From Epithemia pelagica (Eukaryota > Protista > Bacillariophyta), in assembly GCA_946965045.2 (NCBI GenBank), contig OX337242.1:2232001-2296000 (forward strand): DNA of 64,000 bases, written 5' to 3'. The position numbers were made by a program, and so were the translations under genes. This document shows, piece after piece, positions 4,434 through 34,387 of this stretch; within the stretch, counting starts at the first letter, position 1, and each line of letters begins with the position of its first letter. The notes beneath the pieces were generated by a model. That model was not told the DNA's origin, searched no databases, and saw only the letters and a program-made list of their open reading frames with translations.

Positions 4434-4921
4434 TCCCCTTTTACGCTTGGGACAGAATCTACCTAGGTAGTAGGAAGAGAACAATGGGTGTGTTGTGTTT
4501 CTTGCTCCGACCTCCGACACAACTTCAGGGCAGGTGGATCATTCCCTTCTTCTTCCTTGCGTCTTGCCCTCTGATTTTTTCTGGGGAGGGTATCTTTTTG
4601 TCGAACCGGGAGCACGACAGACTCCAACTGCGATCGTCAGTCGCCCAGAACTGCTTTCGCTCCACACCAGAAAACTTCCTAGCTGTCTACTCCAAAAATG
4701 CGAGACGAACTATCTATGGTCTCTACAAGAGCTTTGGTACATAGTCTGGTATCGAGCTCTCTAGGAAGTCGGAAAATACACGCAACAACACGGTGCTCCA
4801 CAACCACTCTACCACGGCCACAGAGACAAAGTCCGAAGACGAAGACGAACACAAAATCACCGTATCCCGTAACGCAAAGCAAATCATTACAGTCCCAAAG
4901 AAGAAAACGACCAGGAGGATA

Positions 4922-17547: not shown

Positions 17548-18480
17548 TTACTTGGACGTGGTGATGTGACTAAGTTGTCGGAGGGGCGAGTGTTCGGTAG
17601 CCTTTCGCTTGGCCTCCTCGGGTATGGAAATGCCATTTTCCACCAATCTCTTTTCCAACAGTTCCGTGTACTCCATGAGCCGTTCATATTTTTCAAACGA
17701 CAAATCCGTCACGACTTCTACAATACCATGACAAATCCGAACAAACCGCCAAATACGTCCCAACACGAGCAACCCCACAAGAGATGCGACATTGTCTTCC
17801 CCCAAAAAGTGAAACGTAAGTTCCAACGCCAGACTGATGGCGACAATAAACAAATCAAAGACATAAAAGGCTTGTCGGAAAAAGACAGATGGTCGCAAAG
17901 CCCAAACAGTCACTAGGTTTTCGAGCAGCAGAATGGACAAAATGGCGATCGTAATACCAAACAGCCATTCTTCCGCTGTATGAACCTTGTGCCATTTATG
18001 TTCATCGCAACCGGCTTCGTATTCCTCATTTGCTACACCTTCTTCACAGAAATCATGATCATCACTCCCTCCAGCCAACCATCGAAGAGAGTGCGAATCT
18101 TGCGCTGGACAGCATGAGATGGCGTCACGTTCAATAATGTGACAGCTCGGATACAATGTTAGGAGAGCCAATTCAATGAACAATATGGTGACATCCAAAA
18201 TCAAGAGGGCGGCCAGAGCTATTTGAACATAGGAGTTGTGCAAAAACGCCAAAGTTTTGCACTCCAACGAATCGCAACCCTGCTTTTCCTCCACACAACG
18301 TTCTGCTTGTCTCATGGTGGGAATGGCATAACACATGCTCCCCTGACTTTTTAATGGTCCCTTGAAGGCCGCCAAGGCGTCCGATTCCTTGTACACGGGG
18401 GTGTCTTCAACCACCTCTTCATTGAGTGGTATTTGGACCATGCTGCTGGAGGCTGTGGTCAATTCTTCGGGAGACGCCAT
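17548..18480 (-). CDS. HVCN1: Voltage-gated proton channel Hv1
   Basis: Four TM helices with no pore domain; S1 Asp (LLILDV); S4 signature RxWRxxR (GRIWRFVRICHG); C-terminal coiled coil. Confidence 0.9.
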   Translation of the reverse strand: MASPEELTTASSSMVQIPLNEEVVEDTPVYKESDALAAFKGPLKSQGSMCYAIPTMRQAERCVEEKQGCDSLECKTLAFLHNSYVQIALAALLILDVTILFIELALLTLYPSCHIIERDAISCCPAQDSHSLRWLAGGSDDHDFCEEGVANEEYEAGCDEHKWHKVHTAEEWLFGITIAILSILLLENLVTVWALRPSVFFRQAFYVFDLFIVAISLALELTFHFLGEDNVASLVGLLVLGRIWRFVRICHGIVEVVTDLSFEKYERLMEYTELLEKRLVENGISIPEEAKRKATEHSPLRQLSHITTSK

Positions 18481-21506: not shown

Positions 21507-22595
21507 TCATGTCCAGAGTTCTGGTCGGATTGAAAACTCGATCAAACGAGCAAAAAGTCTGGAGTTCTTGGTCACAAGCGAAATCGTTTCACAGGAATTT
21601 TCCGTATCTCCGCCCACCACAACAATGCTAGTTGACATGACAACCATGTGACCAAAATCCCGCTTTATTGTCATTTCTGGAAGCTCCCATGTAATGTTTT
21701 TCTCAGTATCCATAACTTCCACAGAACACAAGCTTTGACGTCCGAGGGAGCCTCCTGCAACAATGAGACAGCGTCCCACTTTGGCGATCGCATGCCCTTG
21801 TCGAGGTGTGTTGAGAGCGAGATTCTTGTGTATCTTCCAAGTTGTCGATGACGGGAAAGCAGAGGATAACGTCGTTCCAGATGCATTGAACTCCATGTAT
21901 TCGACAGAGTTCAGCCATCCATCATTCCCACATCCACCAACGACATAAAGACGTTGACCAATCACAGTAATGCCACAGTCACTTCGAGATACAGTCATGT
22001 GTGGTCCGGAACACTGACTCTCACATGCTGTATCGATGATGTCGACAGATGAAACGAATTCCCTTTGATGGCTTCCACCCACCACGACAATGTATCGGTC
22101 ACATACAACAGTGGCGGCACAACCATATCCTTTGGACGTCAAACGACAATCCAATGTCTTCCATCGCGTCCCGGTGTTGTCGTTGGTAGATAATGGCTCA
22201 AGCAAATTTCGGACAGATATTTGTTCAATTGTATCCAAGTACGACGAGTAATTCAACCCTCCAATTGCGTAAATACAACCATTGCAGACAACAGTTGCAT
22301 GCATCGATCGGCTTTCGTTCATACGTGGTCCCACTCGCCACGCTGTGCCACATTCCCCAACATTCAAAAGAAGAACGGAACTTGTGTGATTGTCAATCGT
22401 CTGTTGTAATCCGCCAAATACAACAAGCGTCTCTTGGTTCGTATCTGGGTCAGTAACGAGAAGAGAACTTGTGTACATACGCCGGCCTTCCGGCAGTGGA
22501 GGCGATCTGGTTAACTTCCATTGTGGTTCATCTGTTGGGACGTTGCAGTCCGCAAAGGCCAGTCCAGAGAGGTGGGCTTGTTCGTAAATCTTCAT
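21507..22595 (-). CDS. Kelch-repeat beta-propeller protein
   Basis: About six repeats with GG..Y/W Kelch spacing (LVVFGG, IYAIGG, IVVVGG, LYVVGG, LIVAGG, IVVVGG); ATG at 22595. Confidence 0.9.
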   Translation of the reverse strand: MKIYEQAHLSGLAFADCNVPTDEPQWKLTRSPPLPEGRRMYTSSLLVTDPDTNQETLVVFGGLQQTIDNHTSSVLLLNVGECGTAWRVGPRMNESRSMHATVVCNGCIYAIGGLNYSSYLDTIEQISVRNLLEPLSTNDNTGTRWKTLDCRLTSKGYGCAATVVCDRYIVVVGGSHQREFVSSVDIIDTACESQCSGPHMTVSRSDCGITVIGQRLYVVGGCGNDGWLNSVEYMEFNASGTTLSSAFPSSTTWKIHKNLALNTPRQGHAIAKVGRCLIVAGGSLGRQSLCSVEVMDTEKNITWELPEMTIKRDFGHMVVMSTSIVVVGGDTENSCETISLVTKNSRLFARLIEFSIRPELWT

Positions 22596-22869
22596 GCTGT
22601 GCCAATGACGCTTGTTCTCGACCGTCGTGATCAATCCACAACTCTTTGTTTTGTGTCATGAGACCCATGAGTGTGCCATTACATCAAATGGTTCCACCAA
22701 AACCCATCGCATGAGCGAAAAACCAATCCTCCACCTTTTGGTATCCATATGTTGGTTCGAAGTTTCGCGTCCGTTTTTTTTAACGCATCTTTGTGCTTTC
22801 CCCTCAAAACTCGAAACCCAACCCATCACGAGTCACGAATTGTGGATCGCGGATGCTCGCGAAGAGCTT

Positions 22870-23904: not shown

Positions 23905-24852
23905 TTATTGCATATGCTTGGGACAAGGGAGTTCTCCAGAATCCTCCATCTCCTTGTAAAGTTGCAGACACAGTGCCAGTGCGTCGGGCTCGGTATGAAA
24001 GAGGTATTTAAGGCATTCGAGCACGTTGAGTCGATAATCTCCGCCAACAAAGGTTGGGATTTTTTCGGAGGAAGGCATCAAGTCGATTTCTCCCGCCAAG
24101 GCCGATTCATAATCGTCGTAGGCCACGAATCCCCATTTCTTGAGAGCTCGGGGCCCCATTTCCTTGAAAAATTCCTTCATTTTGTCGTCTGGTCGAATGG
24201 AAATCATTCGAGCGAGTTTGAGTGGAATCAGTGATGTTACATCGGTATTACGTCGTTTCGTATCCATATCGTATTTATTCCAATCAAAATCAACCATATC
24301 CGAAAAGGAAATGATTCCCTTGGTTGTCGCCATGGGATACGATCGAATGATACTCCGGGCCATGAGGGCAAACATTTTGAGGGACAAGTCCTTCCATTCG
24401 TCAGTTTGATCCTCCTTGGCAGGGTAGTATTCATCACCATAGTATTCATGAGTCCATTGCAAAGGGGCTCCATTCTTTGCCACAAGATTGGGATCTACCA
24501 CCATGAGACCACAAGACCAGACCTTGATAAGATACTTCATAACCTCTGACGTCCACGTTCCGTGAAGCCATCCAAATCGCCGTTCGGCTTCTTCCAATTG
24601 TTGCAGCCGTTCCACTACCACCTTGGCCAGTCGGCTTTCGTCCTCATCGATTGGAGCACCCACGGTTGCCACACATGTTGCCCATAACATCTCTTTGGGG
24701 TGTACCTTTGGAAGGTTGCGGGTGGCACGAACCTTGAGGTAAACTTGTGCACGAGACTTGGATAGTTGAAAGGTTGAAAAGAGATCTTGTTCCTCCTCGC
24801 TGAGGTCTAGGGCCCCCGGTGCCTCACGCCAAGTGTTGCACGAAGCGTCCAT
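23905..24852 (-). CDS. CRAL-TRIO/Sec14-like lipid-binding domain protein
   Basis: KGIISFSDMVDFDW..IPLKLARMISIRP..IPTFVGG follows the CRAL-TRIO pattern (G..i..D, P.r....i..P, iP..lGG); ATG at 24852. Confidence 0.6.
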   Translation of the reverse strand: MDASCNTWREAPGALDLSEEEQDLFSTFQLSKSRAQVYLKVRATRNLPKVHPKEMLWATCVATVGAPIDEDESRLAKVVVERLQQLEEAERRFGWLHGTWTSEVMKYLIKVWSCGLMVVDPNLVAKNGAPLQWTHEYYGDEYYPAKEDQTDEWKDLSLKMFALMARSIIRSYPMATTKGIISFSDMVDFDWNKYDMDTKRRNTDVTSLIPLKLARMISIRPDDKMKEFFKEMGPRALKKWGFVAYDDYESALAGEIDLMPSSEKIPTFVGGDYRLNVLECLKYLFHTEPDALALCLQLYKEMEDSGELPCPKHMQ

Positions 24853-25140
24853 TGTACTCGCTGAGGTCTGTTTCAAGAAGCAGTTCTCTTCTGTGATAAA
24901 GTTTCATGCTCTCGAGAGCAAGCCTCGAGGAAATGATCGTTTCTATCGCACAAACAATGCGTGGCATGGTTGAGGCCACCAATGCAGCTGATGGGTGGGT
25001 GGGGTGCGATCGCATGCTGAACGCACGATCGACCATGAAGAATCGAAAATCTGCCCCATTAACTTCTGCTAGAACAGTCCCGCATGATTCATCAATTCCA
25101 CCATGGCGTCATGTTTTCTCGGTCGTCTTCTGATTATTCA

Positions 25141-26088
25141 ATGGCATCCTCGATGCCGTCGTCACTCAAGCACTTGAACCCCGTGGTTGGTGGCAAGAGA
25201 TGGAACGAAAACGACTTTCCATTTGAATCCAATTACAATGATCACTTTGAAACACCCTTGGTGGCTGTGGCGTATCAAGATATTCTTCCATTGTTGAAAT
25301 TAATTCAATCTCATCGAGATCTTTCAAATTCTCGTGATAATCCACAAAAGAAAAGGAAACACAACAAGAAAGATTCTGCCTTGATTCTCTATGATCCTTA
25401 TTACTGCAATGGAAGGGCCAAAGTCTTGCTGCAACAGATTGGATTTGAGAATGTGATTCACGAGAAGCGTGATTTTTACCGTGACATGGAACAAGAGCAA
25501 GTGCCGAGGCACCATGTCCTTATAACCAATCCACCCTATTCGGATTTGCACAAACAAAAATGCCTCGAATTTTGCCTTACACAAACCACGGTTCCATTCT
25601 TTTTGCTCATGCCCAATTATGTGGCGTCGCGAAACTATTTTCGAGAGGCTGTGACAGGTTCGGCTACTCATGACATGATTTACCTTGTTCCATCGGGTCC
25701 TTATGAGTATGAGCATCCTCACGGAACGGGTCATGACAAGTCACCCTTTCAAAGTCTCTGGTACTGCGGATTGCCCAAACGCTCCTCTGTTTCAATGGAA
25801 GCCGTACGTCGCATGGAGGAGAAGGACCCAACGTTTGGCGGCAAGTTGGTGTTCACCTGGTCCAGTTTGATGCAACATCAGGGGTTGTCCCTCAAACGCC
25901 CAAATCCCCGACAACGGAAACGGAAACGTGCGAAAACGATCGCAGATGAACCGAATGAGTCGCTGGAAAGGACAAATCATGATTCGACAAGAGTGGACAA
26001 ACCTAACGACGACAACCGTCATGGATCGAAACGAAAGGAAAGCAAATATCGAGACAAAGATGGTTCAAGAAAAAGAAAAAGATTCTAA
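25141..26088 (+). CDS. Amino (N6A/N4C-type) methyltransferase-like protein with NPPY motif
   Basis: DHFETP, LYDPYYCNG (SAM-binding-like), LITNPPYS (motif IV) and FFLLMP..V; basic, NLS-like C-tail (KRKRF). Confidence 0.7.
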   Translation: MASSMPSSLKHLNPVVGGKRWNENDFPFESNYNDHFETPLVAVAYQDILPLLKLIQSHRDLSNSRDNPQKKRKHNKKDSALILYDPYYCNGRAKVLLQQIGFENVIHEKRDFYRDMEQEQVPRHHVLITNPPYSDLHKQKCLEFCLTQTTVPFFLLMPNYVASRNYFREAVTGSATHDMIYLVPSGPYEYEHPHGTGHDKSPFQSLWYCGLPKRSSVSMEAVRRMEEKDPTFGGKLVFTWSSLMQHQGLSLKRPNPRQRKRKRAKTIADEPNESLERTNHDSTRVDKPNDDNRHGSKRKESKYRDKDGSRKRKRF

Positions 26089-26450: not shown

Positions 26451-29400
26451 CTACTTGGACGGTTCATCGGAGAGCATAACGTCTTGGTTGCAAAGAGGAC
26501 AACACGCTTTGGTTTGAAGCCAGGTGTCCAAACATGCCACGTGAAATACATGCTGACATGAATGCAACTGTCGCAGGTTCTCCTCTGTAGTATCGGCATC
26601 AAAATCTCCCAGGCAAATGGGGCAGCGACGATCATTTATCGAATTGCCTTCCGAAGAGGCTTCGTCGGGGCAACACTTCTTGTCCAACTCGGATAAGTAC
26701 TTTGCAGGGCTGATCAACGACGAATTGCTCTCCAATTTGGCTTTTGATTCGTCTGTCCAGGTTTCATTCACTTTCCGGCCCACGCGTTCCGTTAGTTCAA
26801 GTAGTCCTTCATAGGTCAACCCATCGACATCCATCGCATCGCCCTGTGCTTCACTGAGGCGACTTTCGAGATCGCCTCGGCGGACCATACCACGTTCCGT
26901 ACACATCATGACGGTCAATGTTGCTGACGGAGCGAGTCCAAGTTCTTTCAATGACTTTGTCCCATGAGCTTCCAGACTGAACTCACGTTTAGGGAGTGCC
27001 AACAAGAGAGTAAACCCTTTCAGAGAAAGCGGCCGTGCGAAAGCGGGGTCCTTTATCATTTGAGGGCCATGTGGAGTCATGACATGTTTGCTTTGAGCAA
27101 CACCAGGGACTGAATGTTTCTGTGCTACAAACTCTGGATCCACAAACTTCTCGATATGTTCATACAAATCGGACAATTTGTCTTCTCCATCAAACTCTTC
27201 TGTTATTGACGATGGATCTCCGGGTAGCCGAATTTTTAATCGACAAGTAGACCCTGAGGATCGCTTGCTCTTGTAGGGAGACGACCGCGCCAAAACCGCA
27301 GGTTTCTTGGCCGCTTCGTGGTTTGGTCCGGAGGAAGTATTTATCGTTGTCCCCATTCCCCAACTATCGTTCCAGTTGTTATCACTGTTGAATGCGTCCC
27401 CATATCCATCATCATAGAACTCAGTGTTCTTTTGTGAGTCATCGTCATTGGAATGCCCATCATCCTCGCCCCACGACTCGTCATTCTCCAAGGGTACCGC
27501 AGAAGCAACAGGAGGTACCTTTGGCTGCGGCAACGCCTCATCATCATTAAGAATATCTATACGAGCATTTATTTGCTCCTGCAATCGCCCGGCACGAATG
27601 TAATCGCGCTCTCCGGCCACCACTTCCATTCGCTCATTCAAGAATTCCAGATGATGGAGCCCTTCTTGCAACTTTCCGGCCCTTACATAATTACCCATGG
27701 CTGCCGCATCTTCAATTTGCTGACGAACATCATCAATGCAAGTAATCTTCTTGTTCTTAACCACCGATGGCGGAAGATCAACGGGCTTTGTTTCTTTATC
27801 ATTCTCGTCTCCAGGAGGGGGAGCTTTGAGTGATGGCTTGTCGGCTGCGGCTCTCTTGTTTGAGAGCGATGTAACTCTCATCGCCACATCTCTGACAGAG
27901 GTCGAAGATTCGGTCACAACCATCGGCGGAGTTTCGATACGGGACAGAACACCTTCAAGTTTAACATTAAGAGAAGATATTTTGTCCAAGAGTTTCGAGT
28001 GTTTCCTGTCATGTCCTTCGTCGTCCTCCATAGCACAGGCTCCAGAGTGTCCGAAGAAGGATGGCTTGATGGAGTTATCACGAGTCCATGACTGCACTTC
28101 TTTTAGGATCAAACTTCGATTCTGGTAGAAATGAAGCCAGATTGGTCGAGCAAAAGGACCGAGATACTTCGCAGAAGAAGAAGACGATGATGTCAGCTTT
28201 TCTTGAGTTTCGTCCATATCTTCTTCTTGTTCTTCGTCGTCGCTGATATCTTCCTCTTGTTCTTCGTCGTCACCGTCTTGAATCCCGAAGTTATCGTCAT
28301 CCTTCCATATTTCATTGGCTTCCTTGGTTTCGTCATTTTCGGCCTCAACGTTCAACACCATCTTGAGCATATCCAACATGGCATATCGCACCGTGCCAAT
28401 TCGTAGCTTGTTTTCGTATATGGCGACATGTCTCGGTACAAAATCTTCATGGACTATGCCGCCCGTTTTGAGTAAATGACCGGTCCGTTGAAAGGATCCC
28501 TCTTTGACTGTGCCTTCCCATCCTCCATGACCAGGCTCGAGATAATAAGGATGTTCGGCCCCCAAGATCAGTCCTTGAATCGATATCAAAACCTGATTCA
28601 AGGTGGAAATGTTTGGACGCCATTTGGGACCGCTCCATGTACCCAATAACGAGAGACAAACCTTGCCATTGGCGTAGAGATTAGGACCAAACCGTACTGT
28701 TCCACCACCAGTCGTCAACAGCTCCACCTTGGGTGGTTCTGTTGGATAGGATCCAGGGACGTAAATATCAAACACAAACAAGCCACCGGAATAAGGAGTA
28801 GGACCAGGTAAGGCTGCGGGTATCATAGCTCGCAAAAACTGGGGAGTTTCCTCGTCAAAGCGGACAAAAACGGAGCATCGTGGATCAGAGGGCAAGGAAT
28901 CATTCATTGTTTCCAGTTCCTTGAACAGCTTTCGAAGACATTTTGGGCTGCTGCCCCCTGCAGTTTCTAGGTTATGTTTCTTGTTGAACACCGATGATTC
29001 ACGAATTCCTTCTGCAGGGGCACACAGTGGTGTGCTCTTGAGATACTCCTTCCAGTCCTCCTCAAAGGCCTTGTCGGTTTCCTTAGGAGAACTAGCAGGC
29101 AACAGTGAAGAAGCGACAACAGAGGCTTCCATCTTCTGTGCACCAACGCTACTACTAGCTGCGTCTTGAACGCTCTGTGAAAGATCCATCGCTTCCGTAT
29201 CCTCTGTGGCCGTAATCACTGCTGAGGCTGGTGCAGCCTTCAGTGATACAGCACTCGACGAACCGGAATCGAGTCCAGTGTTCTCCTGTAGAAAGGGTTC
29301 CTGCGTGGAACCTTTTTCAGAGATGACACCTGAAGAGTTTTCTGGGGCACTTGTTGCCGCGTCCCCGGAAGGAGCAAGTTTTTGAATGCGCAAATCGGCG

Positions 29401-30119
29401 AAACGAGGAGGTCCAGTCATGGGAGTATCTTTGGAAGGTGTCGTCGCCGCAAATGACAAGGCGGATTCTCTACGTAACGCCTTGATTTTTCGATCCTCTT
29501 CATCTTCTTTCCAAGCTCGCAAAGCACGTGTTCGTTCAGCCGCTTTCGCCTTTCGCGCTGCCCTTGCGGATGCTTGTCTCCGCTGACGTTCGGCTTCACT
29601 GAGGAACGGACCCGTGTCGTCGTCGCTCTTTCTTCCCGCAGTACTTGGTGATTTCCTGTCACTCGCCGAGACCTTTTTGCAAGGATCGGTCGCTGCTCCA
29701 ATACCCATTTGCTCCAACTGCGTGAGTTTGGTTTCCAGACTGTGCATCAAGATGGAACATAGTTCTCGGTTTTTGGGTGAATCGGTAAACACGAGAACTG
29801 TTTCTTCTTCATCACTCCGCGCAAACCCTGCCAATCCCAAAATATCCAAGGCACCTGGAACAGATACAATCGATGCTTGAATTCGAGGATTCTGTAACCG
29901 GATCCGACGATACTTGAGTTCGGAATGGACAGTTGCGTTGTGGATCAGCTTGCGAAGGACCGTGCAGGACTCAACGAGACCGGTCCAATTCGTTCCTTGC
30001 GATTGGTCCTGAGGTTGTTGAAACCGCTGTGATCCATCCGCATTCAAAGTTTCAAAAGGAATACTGTTGGCCCTATAAAAGTCTTCCAAGACGGCCGATA
30101 CCACTAGAGTTGACTCCAT
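26451..30119 (-). CDS. Multidomain ubiquitin enzyme: PUB + BIRC6/UBE2Z-like UBC + UVR-like repeats + UBX + RING-H2
   Basis: PUB (LRKLIHNA..KYRRIRLQNPRI..GALDILGLAGF); UBC (PTPYSGGLFVFDI..YPTEPP..PNLYANGKVCLSLLGTW); UBX (CRLKIRLPG..LKELGLAPSATL); TYEGLLELTERVG; RING-H2 (CPICLGDF..CQHVFHVACLDTWL..CPLC). One uninterrupted 1222-aa ORF. Confidence 0.9.
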   Translation of the reverse strand: MESTLVVSAVLEDFYRANSIPFETLNADGSQRFQQPQDQSQGTNWTGLVESCTVLRKLIHNATVHSELKYRRIRLQNPRIQASIVSVPGALDILGLAGFARSDEEETVLVFTDSPKNRELCSILMHSLETKLTQLEQMGIGAATDPCKKVSASDRKSPSTAGRKSDDDTGPFLSEAERQRRQASARAARKAKAAERTRALRAWKEDEEDRKIKALRRESALSFAATTPSKDTPMTGPPRFADLRIQKLAPSGDAATSAPENSSGVISEKGSTQEPFLQENTGLDSGSSSAVSLKAAPASAVITATEDTEAMDLSQSVQDAASSSVGAQKMEASVVASSLLPASSPKETDKAFEEDWKEYLKSTPLCAPAEGIRESSVFNKKHNLETAGGSSPKCLRKLFKELETMNDSLPSDPRCSVFVRFDEETPQFLRAMIPAALPGPTPYSGGLFVFDIYVPGSYPTEPPKVELLTTGGGTVRFGPNLYANGKVCLSLLGTWSGPKWRPNISTLNQVLISIQGLILGAEHPYYLEPGHGGWEGTVKEGSFQRTGHLLKTGGIVHEDFVPRHVAIYENKLRIGTVRYAMLDMLKMVLNVEAENDETKEANEIWKDDDNFGIQDGDDEEQEEDISDDEEQEEDMDETQEKLTSSSSSSAKYLGPFARPIWLHFYQNRSLILKEVQSWTRDNSIKPSFFGHSGACAMEDDEGHDRKHSKLLDKISSLNVKLEGVLSRIETPPMVVTESSTSVRDVAMRVTSLSNKRAAADKPSLKAPPPGDENDKETKPVDLPPSVVKNKKITCIDDVRQQIEDAAAMGNYVRAGKLQEGLHHLEFLNERMEVVAGERDYIRAGRLQEQINARIDILNDDEALPQPKVPPVASAVPLENDESWGEDDGHSNDDDSQKNTEFYDDGYGDAFNSDNNWNDSWGMGTTINTSSGPNHEAAKKPAVLARSSPYKSKRSSGSTCRLKIRLPGDPSSITEEFDGEDKLSDLYEHIEKFVDPEFVAQKHSVPGVAQSKHVMTPHGPQMIKDPAFARPLSLKGFTLLLALPKREFSLEAHGTKSLKELGLAPSATLTVMMCTERGMVRRGDLESRLSEAQGDAMDVDGLTYEGLLELTERVGRKVNETWTDESKAKLESNSSLISPAKYLSELDKKCCPDEASSEGNSINDRRCPICLGDFDADTTEENLRQLHSCQHVFHVACLDTWLQTKACCPLCNQDVMLSDEPSK

Positions 30120-31307: not shown

Positions 31308-32987
31308 CTACTCCTTCCACGGTTCACATATAATGGATCCGTAAAAGGGTCGTTTCACAATGTCCGATCGGGCTTTGGCTACATCATTCAATCCAATGTA
31401 ACGATCAATGTCTGGTCGGAGTTGTCGAGTCGACAACAAATGCAACAAAAAGTCCAAATCTTGTCGGACATTCTCATCCATGGACTCCCCAATCACATCC
31501 GCAAAGTTGAAGAGGGTCGCACGTTTCATGGACACCAAATAGCAATACTCGAGCAGAAACTCATAGGGTAGACAACAAGCCGCATTCACATGCTCATCCT
31601 CTCCCTGCCTTTCTGTACCCGCATTTTTAGACCCAGAAATGGGCACACACACAAGTCTCCCCTTACGAGCCAGTGCCGCTCGTACGGCAGGGAATTCTTT
31701 GGGAAACTGGTAGTCCAAAACGACATCCATTTTTCCTTCCACATTGGGAAGCCATTCATCTGGTTCCTCTCCCAGTATTGTGGGTCGGTGTTTGTGCAAA
31801 ATGGAAAAATACTCTCGCGGCGCCGTCACATAGACATGAGAGCATCCCGCAATCTCTGCCATGCGAACCGCGGCCTGTGCCTCGAGGCTGGTGCAGCCCG
31901 TGATCAATACGGTACGCCCCCGTAAACATGTGCGACTGTACCGATGGGGGCGACTTCGACCATGGTGCAGTGCAGAAAAGGCCGGAAGGTACGTGGACAA
32001 AATGGCACAAATCTCCGCGGCATCCAACTTTTTGGGCACTACACAGAGTCGACGGGTCGGAACGGAAATATACTTGGCATTGGCGCCTCCTCCAGGGACA
32101 ATGGCTGCCACACGCGTTCCAGCTACCAGAATTCCAACATCTGATGACTTTTGTTCCTCCTCAAGGAGATGATCGCTATTCGATTCATTCGAACGTGGCG
32201 TTGTCTGCTGAACGACTCCAACAAAGTTGCTTCCTGGAACATAGTTTTCACTGGCAGCCCCTGCGGCACCCATCAAGTCGCAATCCAGGGGCGAGGATTG
32301 TCTATGAATCATCCAATCCATATCACATATAGCTGACGCCTGTTGAAACGTGATAATGAACAACGAATAAGAAAAGTGACTCCGTTGCATGGTGCGAATA
32401 AAGGAACAGAACTCACGTACTTCTACAATCACCCTGGCCGTTTCTTCATCACCATCGCCATCTCTCGAGTTGAGACCAATACAGCCCAACTGCAATCGGT
32501 CCATATAGGGCCAAGAGGAAGAGAGAGTAGGTGATGTCGCTTTAGGCTTTGCGCTGTTGTGAATGGCCTTTGCACGTTGTCGCCGCTTCCCAACGATATT
32601 TCGATGAGGTAGTTTTCTGGCAACCGATTTCATGGAATTGCAGAGTGCCGAGGCATTGACTCCTCCAAGAAAGGTGGAAGTCCCATTGGTGGTCGTGGAA
32701 ACGTTGGTAAAGGTGATGAGAGACTCATCTTTCTCAACGCTGCTTATGCCTACTTCGTCGTCTGCATCATTCTCCCAATCTTCCTGTGTCTCCACAGTTT
32801 CGTCAATCGTTTTCTCTTCATTGGAGGTTACCATTTCTACTTCCAAGTAGCCGCTGTCACCATCGGTCCATGTGAGCTCCTCTTGCTGGCCGAGATACGG
32901 TCCCACAAAAGAAGATGCATCGGACGAAACCTTGGAAGCAATATCACTGTGACTTCGTGAGTAACCCCAAATGTCCCCAAAGTTCAT
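31308..32987 (-). CDS. MDR-superfamily (zinc-binding dehydrogenase/quinone reductase-like) protein with low-complexity N-terminus
   Basis: VIVE|ASAICDMD (probable in-frame intron 32340-32420), YVPGSNFVG, GTRVAAI..GGANAKYI, AEICAILSTYLPAF, VLITG, DVVLDY, GRLV and GSIICEPW; ATG 32987. Confidence 0.75.
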   Translation of the reverse strand: MNFGDIWGYSRSHSDIASKVSSDASSFVGPYLGQQEELTWTDGDSGYLEVEMVTSNEEKTIDETVETQEDWENDADDEVGISSVEKDESLITFTNVSTTTNGTSTFLGGVNASALCNSMKSVARKLPHRNIVGKRRQRAKAIHNSAKPKATSPTLSSSWPYMDRLQLGCIGLNSRDGDGDEETARVIVEVREFCSFIRTMQRSHFSYSLFIITFQQASAICDMDWMIHRQSSPLDCDLMGAAGAASENYVPGSNFVGVVQQTTPRSNESNSDHLLEEEQKSSDVGILVAGTRVAAIVPGGGANAKYISVPTRRLCVVPKKLDAAEICAILSTYLPAFSALHHGRSRPHRYSRTCLRGRTVLITGCTSLEAQAAVRMAEIAGCSHVYVTAPREYFSILHKHRPTILGEEPDEWLPNVEGKMDVVLDYQFPKEFPAVRAALARKGRLVCVPISGSKNAGTERQGEDEHVNAACCLPYEFLLEYCYLVSMKRATLFNFADVIGESMDENVRQDLDFLLHLLSTRQLRPDIDRYIGLNDVAKARSDIVKRPFYGSIICEPWKE

Positions 32988-33538
32988 GACCACGGTGACA
33001 GCAGCAGCAGCAGCAGGAACAACAACACTGGGGGGTTGATTCGATTTGTGACGAAACGAACCTTGCTTCCCATCGAGAACGGTTGGTAGAGGAGGGCAGT
33101 CCACGAAAAGCTAAGTTTGTGTGCAAATGAGTTCCTTTCCACGCCGTGGGGTGTCACTTAAGGGTTTTTTTGGCGCACACTTTTGAAATCTCTTTTATGA
33201 AAGGACCCACATACTGCAGTCAGACACATGAATGTCCTGCGGGGAGCAGTCCTACCGGAGGCATACTCCACGATCACTTTGCTGCTTCTGGTTTGGGACG
33301 CTCCGTCTCATCTGTGGACTTTATGGCTTCCCGTCTCATGTCAAGAGTCAACCGGTACTTTTTGGCTTACAGTCTATCACAGCTCGGAAGCAGGTTACAC
33401 GTGTGGGAGAGCCGTTAAAGGTACGACTGTTCCGATGAACATTGCATTCGGTCGCGCGTGACGTGCGCAAAATATCTTCCTTCTGCCTTATCGACAGTGA
33501 CGAATGAGGACGAGATGATTCCAACCGATCACCACAAG

Positions 33539-34387
33539 ATGTCAATCGTACCATGCTTTTTACGACGATTTCATGTTGTGACCTTGCTACTCGTTCTCTC
33601 ATTCCCAGTCGATAGAGCCAATGGTTATCTTCCGGGCGTCGTCTTCTCGTCTCGACAAGAACTCGTGGCGCTTTCAGCTTGCAATCTACCAAGAAGAACG
33701 GTTTCTACCACCACCTACGACCAATGGCCTTGTGGTGGTCGAAGTACCGTGGTATTAAATCTCCAGACAAATGACGAGAACAGCGACGACCAGCCCTCAT
33801 CTTTGGAAGGAAAAGATTTGGCCAGAAAATTTTACGAGTTTCAAAAAGGACAAGAAGCGACACAAGAGCCGATAAAGAGCCAACCGACGGGCGACTCTAC
33901 TACGAGTGATGGAACAACAACGACCAATGCGAACGTACGACCAGGTCAACGCCAAGATGCATCGGATGTGCGTCCCATCAAGTTTACTGGTCAACAACGT
34001 TCCCTCTTTAGCGAACCCGAAACCAGAACATCTTCACGTCTCAGCCGCGAACAGGGAAGAAAATTCAATCTGGCCGGTACATTTGAACGAACGTTGCCAA
34101 TCCAAGCAGGTGTTGTAGCTCTCTCGCTCGCTTTTGTTCTGTATATTGGCTTTACGGGCGGCATCACTTCGGGCATTGGTGGAATCGATGAGTACATGGA
34201 CGACGATGAGGCCGATGACATCTGGGAACTCCAACGAAGAGATTCAATTATGCGTCAACTGGGAACGGAACAAGACGAAGAAGGCCTATCATACTATGGA
34301 GGAAGCAACAAGAATGGCTACCTGCAGAATCCAGGAAGGGATGATCAATCGGCAGAGCGTAGTAGCTCCGGCAGTGTTTGGCTTTGA
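33539..34387 (+). CDS. Hypothetical protein with signal peptide and one TM helix
   Basis: MSIVPCFLRRFHVVTLLLVLSFPVDRANG signal, a Ser/Thr/Arg-rich transit-like stretch, and TM IQAGVVALSLAFVLYIGFTGG. Confidence 0.65.
   Translation: MSIVPCFLRRFHVVTLLLVLSFPVDRANGYLPGVVFSSRQELVALSACNLPRRTVSTTTYDQWPCGGRSTVVLNLQTNDENSDDQPSSLEGKDLARKFYEFQKGQEATQEPIKSQPTGDSTTSDGTTTTNANVRPGQRQDASDVRPIKFTGQQRSLFSEPETRTSSRLSREQGRKFNLAGTFERTLPIQAGVVALSLAFVLYIGFTGGITSGIGGIDEYMDDDEADDIWELQRRDSIMRQLGTEQDEEGLSYYGGSNKNGYLQNPGRDDQSAERSSSGSVWL

What the first reader, a model, noticed from the sequence alone, without database searches (positions are those of the whole stretch)
26451..30119. Single-chain E2-E3 carrying two different p97/Cdc48-docking domains (PUB-UBC-UVR-UBX-RING)
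Seen: five recognisable modules in one intronless 1222-aa ORF, with the UBC active-site Cys (GKVCLSLL) and all eight RING-H2 ligands intact, plus two UVR-like helical repeats. Established: PUB binds the p97 C-terminus, UBX binds the p97 N-domain, and RING activates E2~Ub. I know no characterised protein with this full combination. Inference: a self-contained ubiquitinate-and-extract machine that could clamp both ends of p97.
Basis: partly seen in the sequence, partly recalled or inferred. Interest (0 to 1): 0.78.

Follow-up and report, generated by a model that had tools for sequence, protein, structure and literature searches.

The report
Diatom E2-RING enzyme with Cdc48 docking sites
A diatom gene encodes one long protein that joins a ubiquitin-conjugating enzyme, a RING ligase domain and three kinds of docking site for the Cdc48/p97 unfoldase; the design is conserved across diatoms but has never been studied.

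Summary
The ORF at 26451-30119 (-) encodes 1222 aa. Pfam finds PUB, UBC, UBX and RING-H2 above threshold. The two UVR repeats are supported at family-profile level only.

I add a sixth element: an SHP box (W920-G-x-G-x-x-I) in a disordered linker about 35 aa before the UBX. It is invariant in 26 of 26 orthologues.

- **UBC:** BIRC6/UBE2Z/UBE2O type (47% identical to human BIRC6 UBC; fold TM 0.78). Cys488 is intact.
- **RING:** Arkadia/Ark2C type, with all eight ligands.
- **Spread:** the same domain order occurs in about 30 sequence clusters. Every named one is a diatom, centric or pennate, and several are complete transcripts, so this is one gene and not a mis-join.
- **Relatives:** diatoms also have a shorter UBC-UVR paralogue. 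Two non-diatom proteins, one from Rhizochromulina, carry PUB, the same UBC type and a C-terminal SHP box.

Caveats on the p97-clamp reading:
- The PUB pocket lacks its first tyrosine (Leu/Ile/Val in 25 of 25).
- The UBX loop is [R/H/L]-P-K, not F-P-R.
- Binding both ends of p97 is already known from UBXD1 and plant PUX2.

Most likely this is a Cdc48-tethered E2/E3. I found no paper describing it. It is a new variant of known kinds, of moderate interest.

The parts
26451..30119 (-). Whole gene: 1222-aa intronless ORF plus stop codon
   Evidence: Collinear with 25 orthologues of 1025-1345 aa that all begin at the aligned Met. No splice joints in RNA-library contigs.
29775..29987 (-). PUB domain (residues 45-115). 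Pocket residues are L58, N61, Y70, R74, N77.
   Evidence: Pfam PF09409, 43.9 bits against a 34.3 cut-off. Weak sequence matches to the PNGase, UBXD1 and HOIP PUB domains. Pocket columns counted.
29460..29609 (-). Conserved Arg/Lys/Glu-rich helix after PUB (residues 171-220); function unknown; not a strict VIM or VBM
   Evidence: Alignment; regex scan for VIM and VBM negative.
27915..29072 (-). BIRC6-type extended UBC module (residues 350-735): N-terminal extension, UBC core 390-585, family-specific beta-hairpin insert about 530-572, acidic low-complexity insert about 586-650, C-terminal helices
   Evidence: phmmer against the BIRC6 UBC, E 2.6e-39. The AF2 model matches BIRC6 UBC chains at TMt 0.78, E 1.9e-15, then UBE2O and UBE2Z.
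28656..28658 (-). Codon of the catalytic Cys488 (GKVCLSLL). The HPN motif reads G478-P479-N480.
   Evidence: Invariant in 26/26. BIRC6 has NPN at the same place.
27540..27722 (-). Two UVR-type helical repeats (residues 800-860)
   Evidence: Alignment. Best PDB hit of the family profile is the UvrB C-terminal domain, E 0.008. Pfam UVR hits in relatives. Three helices with pLDDT above 90.
27339..27368 (-). SHP box (binding segment 1) D918-S-W-G-M-G-T-T-I-N927, inside a disordered linker
   Evidence: W920, G921 and G923 are 26/26 conserved while flanking columns are 15-40%. Exactly one regex match per orthologue, always at the aligned place. Consensus h(x)1-2F/W(x)0-1GxGx2L from PMC5389986. pLDDT below 50 around it.
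26895..27257 (-). UBX domain (residues 955-1075) with an insertion of about 45 aa between helix 1 and strand 3; S3/S4 loop is L1042-P-K
   Evidence: Pfam PF00789. phmmer match to UBXD2/UBXN4. Foldseek matches to UBXD7, FAF1 and UBXD2 UBX domains, TMt up to 0.85. Loop columns.
26775..26894 (-). Conserved pre-RING segment (residues 1076-1115), family consensus RGELESRL..AQGDAMDVDGLTYEGL.ELTERVG
   Evidence: Alignment; many invariant columns; helices in the model.
26487..26627 (-). RING-H2 finger (residues 1165-1211), Arkadia/Ark2C/RLIM type
   Evidence: Best PDB sequence hits are RNF165/ARK2C, Arkadia, RLIM and RNF38, E about 4e-8. Foldseek match to RNF165 at 38% identity, rmsd 1.8.

Best explanation
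This is a real nuclear gene of a diatom, and one member of a family conserved across diatoms. It encodes a soluble multidomain ubiquitin enzyme that is built to work on the Cdc48/p97 unfoldase.

**Shown here**
- One ORF contains PUB, a BIRC6-type UBC with its catalytic Cys, two UVR hairpins, an SHP box, UBX and an Arkadia-type RING-H2.
- The modules are joined by long disordered linkers.
- The order and the key residues are conserved across centric and pennate diatoms.

**Inferred**
1. An E1 charges Cys488 with ubiquitin.
2. The protein docks on the Cdc48 N-domain mainly through the SHP box, helped by the adjacent non-canonical UBX domain. This is a bidentate SHP-UBX module like that of p47 and PUX5.
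3. The N-terminal PUB gives a second, weaker hold on the Cdc48 C-terminal tail or on another PIM-like ligand.
4. The RING stimulates ubiquitin discharge from the UBC of the same chain, or from a partner chain held by the UVR hairpins.
5. Ubiquitin chains are therefore built or extended on proteins that Cdc48 is engaging or releasing, in the manner of an E4.
For: - **Domains and residues:**
- **UBC type:** the UBC and its extensions match BIRC6.
- **RING:** of the Ark2C/Arkadia type, with the E2-binding Ile/Val, Trp and Pro conserved.
- **SHP box:** invariant in 26/26 inside an otherwise unconserved, disordered linker, against a 7% chance of any match per shuffled protein.
- **SHP travels with PUB:** SHP boxes are also present at the C-termini of the two nearest non-diatom relatives that carry PUB+UBC. 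They are absent from the 13 PUB-less UBC-UVR paralogues.
- **UBX:** beta-grasp fold with a loop of canonical length and an invariant Arg964 and Pro1043.
- **PUB:** keeps N61, R74 and N77 of the tail-binding pocket (PMC6995525).
- **Precedents:** SHP+UBX and SHP+PUB bidentate binding is shown experimentally for PUX5 and PUX2 (PMC13078151).
- **One gene:** the same order is found in about 30 clusters and in complete transcripts.
Against: - No binding or activity data exist for any member of the family.
- The first pocket Tyr of the PUB domain is Leu/Ile/Val in all members, and the second is variable. A Val at the first position goes with no PIM binding in SPATA2 (PMC6995525).
- The UBX loop lacks the Phe of FPR.
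- BIRC6 and UBE2O are named E2/E3 hybrids or E3-independent E2s in their PDB entries. From my own knowledge, no RING partner is established for that clade.
- The nearest RINGs were solved with UbcH5-type E2s.
- The RING linchpin position is Asn in this species (Lys in 23/26).
- I could not inspect the Cdc48 tail of this organism.
- RNA evidence for this locus is only scattered low-depth contigs from a 97-98% identical strain.
Confidence: 0.6

Rival explanations
1. There are two independent catalytic arms. The BIRC6-type UBC acts without any E3, as BIRC6 and UBE2O do. The Arkadia-type RING recruits a separate UbcH5-type E2. The protein would then combine a priming activity and a chain-extending activity on Cdc48, and would not be a cis E2-RING pair.
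For: The UBC belongs to the clade of hybrid or E3-independent E2s. The closest solved RINGs (Ark2C, RLIM, RNF38, RNF13) were crystallised with UbcH5-type E2~Ub. The RING's generic E2-binding residues are intact.
Against: The UBC and RING have stayed fused, in the same order, throughout diatoms, which suggests they work together. The UBC-UVR paralogue shows that the E2 can exist without a RING, so adding the RING in cis presumably changed its function. Nothing here tests E2-RING pairing.
Confidence: 0.3
2. The PUB and UBX domains have been put to other uses and do not hold Cdc48. The protein is a general quality-control E2/E3 like UBE2O or BIRC6. Its PUB binds another partner (as SPATA2's PUB binds CYLD), and its UBX serves as a ubiquitin-like interaction or regulatory module.
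For: The PUB lacks the first pocket Tyr in 25/25 (SPATA2 precedent in PMC6995525). The UBX loop is R/H/L-P-K, not F-P-R. The UBX domains of UBXD1 and PUX2 do not bind the N-domain cleft (PMC5389986, PMC13078151).
Against: The invariant SHP box next to the UBX has no known partner other than the p97 N-domain (PMC5389986), and it co-occurs with PUB across three architectures. The relative from Rhizochromulina has a canonical R...FPR UBX. N61, R74 and N77 of the tail-binding pocket are conserved.
Confidence: 0.12
3. The long ORF is an artefact: adjacent genes joined by assembly or read-through, or a pseudogene.
For: No single RNA contig spans the locus in the runs laid.
Against: The ORF is 1222 codons with no stop. 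A 98% identical 1221-aa protein is found on another assembly. The domain order is the same in more than 25 species, including complete MMETSP transcripts of 1127-1174 aa. Catalytic and zinc-binding residues are invariant.
Confidence: 0.02

Closest known systems
UBXD1 (UBXN6) and Arabidopsis PUX2, the group III PUB-UBX cofactors of p97/CDC48
   Same: PUB and UBX sit in one chain, with an extra linear motif for the N-domain (VIM in UBXD1, SHP in PUX2). The architecture is flexible, like beads on a string. The UBX is non-canonical (PMC5389986, PMC13078151).
   Different: Those proteins have no catalytic domain. Here a UBC, UVR repeats and a RING are inserted. The order is PUB...SHP-UBX, with the SHP directly before the UBX. 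No VIM is present. The first pocket Tyr of the PUB is replaced.
p47 / p37 / PUX5 (SHP-UBX bidentate module)
   Same: An SHP box a few tens of residues upstream of a UBX domain, in a flexible linker (PDB 9v9o appears among the fold matches).
   Different: There is no SEP or UBA domain. The UBX loop is R/H/L-P-K, not F-P-R/N. The UBX has an internal insertion of about 45 aa.
BIRC6 (Apollon/BRUCE), UBE2O and UBE2Z: the extended-UBC clade of E2 and E2/E3 hybrids
   Same: The UBC core is 47% identical to human BIRC6 and shares the TTGG insertion before the xPN motif, the CLSLL active site and the N- and C-terminal helical extensions.
   Different: There is no BIR domain, giant scaffold or UBE2O CR1/CR2 domains. 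It has GPN where BIRC6 has NPN, a family-specific beta-hairpin insert, and a RING in cis. The database names 'UBE2O' and 'IAP repeat-containing protein 6' for the Seminavis members reflect UBC similarity only.
gp78/AMFR and HRD1: RING E3s that bind p97 directly, with gp78 also holding its E2 through G2BR
   Same: A functional analogue: a RING, a dedicated E2 and a p97-binding element brought together (PMC5389986). AMFR and HRD1 RINGs are among the sequence matches.
   Different: Those are membrane proteins that recruit the E2 non-covalently and bind p97 through a VIM or VBM. Here everything is covalently fused in a soluble protein, and docking is through SHP, UBX and PUB.
Arkadia (RNF111) / Ark2C (RNF165) / RLIM RING-H2 ligases
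   Same: These are the best sequence and structure matches for the RING.
   Different: No SIM or other substrate-binding region of those ligases was detected. The linchpin is Lys in the family and Asn in this species, where they have Arg.
HOIP (RNF31): an E3 ligase with a PUB domain
   Same: An E3 that carries a PUB domain able to bind p97 and other PIM ligands (PMC5389986, PMC6995525).
   Different: HOIP is an RBR ligase with an intact Tyr-containing pocket. It has no UBC, UBX or SHP.

Membership tests
UBC/E2 superfamily, BIRC6-UBE2Z-UBE2O clade | UBC fold with the catalytic Cys in the (H/N)PN...C context | tested here: met
   Cys488 aligns with the BIRC6 active-site Cys. The motif is G-P-N (BIRC6 has N-P-N), with Pro and Asn invariant in 26/26. 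Pfam UQ_con scores 61 bits.
UBC/E2 superfamily, BIRC6-UBE2Z-UBE2O clade | Clade-specific extensions and the TTGG-type insertion before xPN | tested here: met
   The Foldseek alignment covers almost the whole 293-residue BIRC6 UBC construct, TMt 0.78. TTGGG aligns with BIRC6 TTGGH. In the UBC tree the family nests among BIRC6-like UBCs.
BIRC6 proper / UBE2O proper (names given in databases) | BIR domain and giant scaffold (BIRC6); CR1/CR2 SH3-like domains PF23043-PF23046 (UBE2O) | tested here: not met
   Pfam finds none of these in the window protein. They are present in true UBE2O hits such as P0043-P0045.
RING-H2 E3 ligase | C3H2C3 zinc ligands with canonical spacing | tested here: met
   C1166, C1169, C1188, H1190, H1193, C1196, C1207 and C1210 are invariant in 26/26.
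RING-H2 E3 ligase | E2-binding hydrophobic residues (Ile after the first Cys pair, Trp in the helix, Pro in the last CPxC) | tested here: met
   I/V1168, W1200 and P1208 are conserved in 26/26.
RING-H2 E3 ligase | Basic 'linchpin' residue after the last Cys, which locks E2~Ub closed (feature recalled from my own knowledge of RING mechanism) | tested here: inconclusive
   Lys in 23/26 orthologues, but Asn in this protein and in the two sequences closest to it. Ark2C and Arkadia have Arg.
UBX domain (p97 N-domain binder) | Beta-grasp fold | tested here: met
   Pfam UBX scores 32 bits against a 21 cut-off. Foldseek matches UBXD7, FAF1, UBXD2 and p47 UBX domains, TMt up to 0.85.
UBX domain (p97 N-domain binder) | R...FPR signature with a cis-Pro touch-turn in the S3/S4 loop | tested here: not met
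   Arg964 and Pro1043 are invariant and the loop length equals that of UBXD2. However, the Phe is L here (R 16, H 6, L 4 across the family) and the final Arg is Lys.
SHP box / BS1 motif | h(x)1-2 F/W (x)0-1 G x G x2 L in a flexible region (PMC5389986) | tested here: met
   W920-G-M-G-T-T-I here, and WGxGxxL in 24 of the other 25 (WGGGGRTL in P0006). The region is disordered in the model. Conservation is 100% at W, G and G against 15-40% in the flanks.
PUB domain (p97 C-tail binder) | PUB fold or profile | tested here: met
   PF09409 scores 43.9 bits against a 34.3 cut-off.
PUB domain (p97 C-tail binder) | PIM pocket YxxN(x)9Y plus K/RxxN (PMC6995525) | tested here: not met
   The pocket reads L58-x-x-N61-(x)8-Y70. 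The first Tyr is L/I/V in 25/25, and the second is Y 12, H 7, K 3, F 2, R 1. N61, R/K74 and N77 are conserved in 25/25.
UVR domain (UvrB/UvrC motif, PF02151) | Helix-loop-helix with the ...AA..(D/E)F..AA.LRD... signature | tested here: inconclusive
   Pfam does not report it for this protein. Relatives do hit it, for example P0064 at 30.4 bits. The family profile's top PDB hit is the UvrB C-terminal domain, E 0.008. Confident helical hairpins are predicted.
SELMA (periplastid ERAD-like) components s_PUB / s_UBX | N-terminal bipartite targeting signal; Trx+PUB (s_PUB) or a Ubx3/PUX10-like UBX (s_UBX) (PMC12412216) | tested here: not met
   There is no N-terminal extension. All orthologues start at the aligned Met, about 40 aa before the PUB. 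There is no thioredoxin domain. No signal-peptide predictor was run.

The most novel reading that the evidence does not exclude
A previously unrecognised class of 'unfoldase-mounted' ubiquitin enzymes exists in ochrophyte algae. These are E2s with built-in Cdc48 docking: a PUB + BIRC6-type UBC + SHP core. In diatoms the core has gained a UBX and a RING and become a single-chain E2-E3. That chain could sit across the Cdc48 barrel and ubiquitinate clients as they enter at the N/D1 side and as they leave at the D2 side, with no separate E3 or adaptor.
Probability: 0.25. Interest if true: 0.8.

Novelty: new variant of a known kind. Interest (0 to 1): 0.55.

Why it matters
It is still unclear how ubiquitination is coupled to substrate unfolding by p97/Cdc48, including who extends chains and who re-ubiquitinates the unfolded product. 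In known systems the E2, the E3, the adaptor and the unfoldase are separate proteins held together by weak contacts.

A natural single chain that joins an E2, a RING and up to three kinds of Cdc48 docking element would be a compact model for reconstitution and cryo-EM. It would also be the first E2 known to me with its own p97-binding modules.

The gene is conserved across diatoms, which are major primary producers, so it probably serves a lineage-specific branch of protein quality control. The result also corrects database names ('UBE2O', 'IAP repeat-containing protein 6') that were given from UBC similarity alone.

Tried and rejected
1. **ESM Atlas feature search:** run on the whole protein; no usable hit.
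2. **Pfam on the UVR/linker segment alone:** no UVR hit. Settled by a family profile against the PDB instead.
3. **VIM and VBM motifs:** looked for in the conserved basic helix (171-220) and elsewhere. Nothing conserved.
4. **A periplastid SELMA role:** rejected. There is no N-terminal extension, and the published s_PUB and s_UBX have different architectures.
5. **Free-standing SHP-UBX-RING proteins as a source of the C-terminal half:** only fragments of the same family were found.
6. **Relatives of the Rhizochromulina PUB-UBA-UBX-UBC protein:** it is a near-singleton. Its nearest kin are the diatom family, followed by UBC-only proteins.
7. **RNA evidence for this locus:** only scattered low-depth contigs of a related strain, with no joints. 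This neither proves nor disproves a single transcript.
8. **Notes on Cdc48 elsewhere in this genome:** none found. I had no tool-derived Cdc48 sequence, so the Cdc48 C-terminal tail of this organism was not checked.
9. **Literature:** six paper searches found no description of this architecture.


Full report
**1. The observation**

The minus strand carries one open reading frame from 30119 to 26451: ATG, 1222 codons, then a stop. An open frame of that length in 48% G+C DNA cannot be chance.

Pfam reports four domains above their curated cut-offs:
- PUB, residues 52-113, E 2e-11.
- UQ_con, residues 437-519, E 9e-17.
- UBX, residues 956-1070, E 1e-7.
- zf-RING_2, residues 1165-1211, E 1e-9.

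The UVR pair is the weakest of the five modules. Pfam does not call it in this protein. Three other lines support it:
- Pfam does call UVR at the aligned position in relatives. PF02151 is precomputed for orthologues P0018 and P0019. The UBC-UVR paralogue P0064 scores 30.4 bits against a 21.5 cut-off.
- A profile of the region has the UvrB C-terminal UVR domain as its best PDB match (E 0.008).
- AlphaFold2 predicts three long helices here with pLDDT above 90.

**2. One gene, in a diatom**

The word search found a 98% identical 1221-aa protein on another assembly. It also found full-length relatives with the same Pfam set in these diatoms:
- Epithemia clementina (54-57% identity)
- Seminavis robusta
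- Nitzschia inconspicua
- Thalassiosira profunda, T. oceanica (EJK51419.1) and T. minuscula
- Detonula confervacea

Many metagenome and MMETSP sequences match as well. Several of the MMETSP entries are complete transcripts of 1127-1174 aa.

A 26-sequence alignment is collinear from an aligned first Met to the RING. Cys488, the eight RING ligands and many other columns are invariant.

The exhaustive profile search, followed by local domain HMMs, showed the same order in about 30 clusters, whole or as fragments: PUB, basic helix, UBC, UVR, UBX, pre-RING segment, RING.

In four public runs, contigs from RNA libraries of a 97-98% identical strain lie in pieces over the RING/UBX, UBC and N-terminal parts. 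No joints were seen. No contig spans the gene, so expression at this locus is only weakly shown. The single-transcript question is answered by the orthologues' complete transcripts.

**3. A sixth element: an SHP box**

The linker between UVR and UBX is poorly conserved and is predicted disordered (pLDDT below 50 for residues 864-942). Inside it, W920, G921 and G923 are identical in 26 of 26 sequences. Position 926 is Leu in 23 and Ile here, while neighbouring columns reach only 15-40%.

The motif WGxGxxL fits the published SHP/BS1 consensus h(x)1-2F/W(x)0-1GxGx2L, which binds the Nc lobe of the p97 N-domain (PMC5389986). Each orthologue has exactly one match, at the aligned place. Only 7% of shuffled sequences have any match.

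The motif lies about 35 residues before the UBX domain. That is the arrangement in p47 and plant PUX5, where SHP and UBX bind the N-domain at two adjacent sites (PMC13078151).

**4. What each module is**

*UBC.* By sequence, the best solved relatives are BIRC6 (E 2.6e-39, 47% identity over 148 residues), then UBE2Z, then UBE2O. The model of residues 340-760 superposes on nearly the whole BIRC6 UBC construct, including its N- and C-terminal extensions (TMt 0.78, E 1.9e-15).
- The HPN motif is GPN in all 26 sequences. BIRC6 has NPN.
- TTGGG aligns with BIRC6 TTGGH. This seems to be the insertion loop (BIRC6 4649-4653) that gates E1 choice in human BIRC6 (PMC13623948). The numbering offset is uncertain.
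- The family also has its own conserved beta-hairpin insert (about residues 530-572).
- This species has a long acidic insert (about residues 586-650).

*RING.* The best matches are RNF165/Ark2C, Arkadia, RLIM and RNF38. The E2-contacting Ile/Val, Trp and Pro are conserved. The residue after the last Cys is Lys in 23 of 26 sequences and Asn here.

*UBX.* It has a beta-grasp fold close to UBXD7, FAF1 and UBXD2 (TMt up to 0.85), with an insertion of about 45 aa after helix 1. The S3/S4 loop has the length of UBXD2's. Its sequence is R/H/L-P-K, not F-P-R (L-P-K in this protein). The upstream Arg964 and Pro1043 are invariant.

*PUB.* The tail-binding pocket is defined as YxxN(x)9Y plus K/RxxN (PMC6995525). 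Here it reads L58-x-x-N61-(x)8-Y70 and R74-x-x-N77.
- The first Tyr is Leu/Ile/Val in 25 of 25 sequences.
- The second Tyr position is variable.
- N61, R/K74 and N77 are conserved in 25 of 25.
- SPATA2, with Val at the first position, does not bind the p97 motif (PMC6995525).

*Other scans.* No VIM or VBM is conserved. There is no N-terminal targeting extension.

**5. Relatives and origin**

Diatoms also have a shorter paralogue of 550-780 aa, for example in Nitzschia and T. profunda. It has the same UBC and three UVR repeats but no PUB, SHP, UBX or RING.

Two non-diatom proteins share the theme in another order:
- Rhizochromulina marina (a dictyochophyte), 828 aa: PUB-UBA-UBX-UBC, with a canonical R...FPR loop and a C-terminal SHP box (FPGTGQTL).
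- An unidentified metagenome eukaryote, 807 aa: PUB, a UBA-like stretch, UBC, and a C-terminal SHP box (FGPGRRL).

In a UBC-domain tree, the full-length family and the UBC-UVR paralogue form one group (SH-aLRT 96). The two non-diatom proteins are its sister (91). This was a quick search, the root is not known, and the tree rests on a single domain.

So PUB + BIRC6-type UBC + SHP looks like an older core in ochrophytes. UVR, UBX and RING would then be diatom additions. That ordering is an inference.

SHP is present in all 28 PUB-bearing proteins and in none of the 13 PUB-less paralogues.

A search with the C-terminal third found no free-standing SHP-UBX-RING family.

**6. Mechanism**

*Shown:* the parts list, their order, their conservation and the intact catalytic residues.

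*Inferred:*
1. An E1 loads Cys488 with ubiquitin.
2. The SHP box, helped by the adjacent UBX, holds the Cdc48 N-domain.
3. The PUB, some 800 residues away through more than 350 disordered residues, can reach the C-terminal tail at the other end of the barrel. With its altered pocket, that contact is the least secure step.
4. The UVR hairpins may pair two chains, or pair this protein with its UBC-UVR paralogue.
5. The RING activates the fused UBC~Ub in cis or in trans.
6. Ubiquitin is added to proteins being handled by Cdc48.

*Main rival (0.3):* the RING recruits a UbcH5-type E2 while the BIRC6-type UBC works without an E3. The RING's nearest solved relatives pair with UbcH5, and this UBC clade is known as E3-independent.

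*Smaller rival (0.12):* the PUB and UBX have been put to other uses and the protein is not a Cdc48 partner. The SHP box argues against this.

*Artefactual fusion:* excluded.

**7. Comparison with what is known**

Binding both ends of p97 with one cofactor is established for UBXD1 (VIM+PUB) and PUX2 (SHP+PUB) (PMC5389986, PMC13078151). SHP-UBX modules, E2/E3 hybrids (BIRC6, UBE2O), p97-binding RING ligases (gp78, HRD1) and a PUB-bearing E3 (HOIP) are all known.

What I did not find anywhere is an E2 with its own p97-docking modules, or an E2 and a RING fused together with them. I looked in the paper library and among solved structures.

The public entries are unnamed, 'hypothetical', or named from UBC similarity ('UBE2O', 'IAP repeat-containing protein 6'). 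The defining domains of UBE2O and BIRC6 are absent.

**8. Verdict**

- It is a new variant built from known kinds, specific to a lineage and uncharacterised.
- Interest is 0.55. It is a neat natural single-chain system for studying how ubiquitination is coupled to Cdc48, but every functional step is still inference, and two of the three docking modules depart from their canonical binding signatures.

Noticed in passing
P0036, P0037, P0038, P0064, P0066-P0071, P0076, P0080 (proteins): Diatoms carry a shorter paralogue of 550-780 aa. It has the same BIRC6-type UBC and three UVR repeats, but no PUB, SHP, UBX or RING. It might pair with the long protein through the UVR hairpins.
   Followed up: partly
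P0097 (Rhizochromulina marina, UniRef A0A7S2STB9) and P0108 (loci L001, L002): These non-diatom proteins have PUB-UBA-(UBX)-UBC and a C-terminal SHP box. They carry the same theme in another order. P0097 has a canonical FPR UBX loop. The organism of P0108 is not identified.
   Followed up: partly
P0059 cluster (10 members, 867-921 aa, contigs up to 32 kb): Its UBC nests inside the full-length family in the tree, yet no PUB, UBX or RING is detected. The first 220 or so residues and the last 200 or so are unexplained.
   Followed up: no
window 28170-28364 (-), residues about 586-650: This species has a long Asp/Glu/Ser-rich insert in the C-terminal extension of the UBC that most orthologues lack. 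A related strain's RNA contig has a 6-base deletion at 28173, inside it.
   Followed up: no
window 28404-28532 (-), residues about 530-572: A family-specific conserved insert in the UBC (invariant G532, G533, W534, K539, G541), predicted as a beta-hairpin. It is absent from BIRC6 and could be a substrate or partner site.
   Followed up: no
window 28900-30000: In run X5 (apparently DNA) several stretches are covered by two contigs at about half depth each, differing at many sites. An example is 29148-29310, with 9 differences. This suggests two haplotypes of a heterozygous diploid.
   Followed up: no
window 21510-22634 (-): A 375-aa ORF encodes a Kelch-repeat beta-propeller protein (Kelch_1, E 8e-30). 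Nothing shown here links it to the finding.
   Followed up: no
window 17551-18480 (-) and 31311-33104 (-): These ORFs have an Ion_trans fragment (E 2e-7) and an ADH_zinc_N_2 domain (E 2e-6). The immediate neighbours at 25084-26085 (+), 23908-24876 (-) and 33458-34384 (+) have no Pfam match.
   Followed up: no
P0009 and P0048 (Seminavis robusta records): The database names '(E3-independent) E2 ubiquitin-conjugating enzyme UBE2O' and 'IAP repeat-containing protein 6' are transferred from UBC similarity only. The UBE2O and BIRC6 hallmark domains are absent. P0048 ends at the UBX, without SHP or RING, and may be a truncated gene model.
   Followed up: partly
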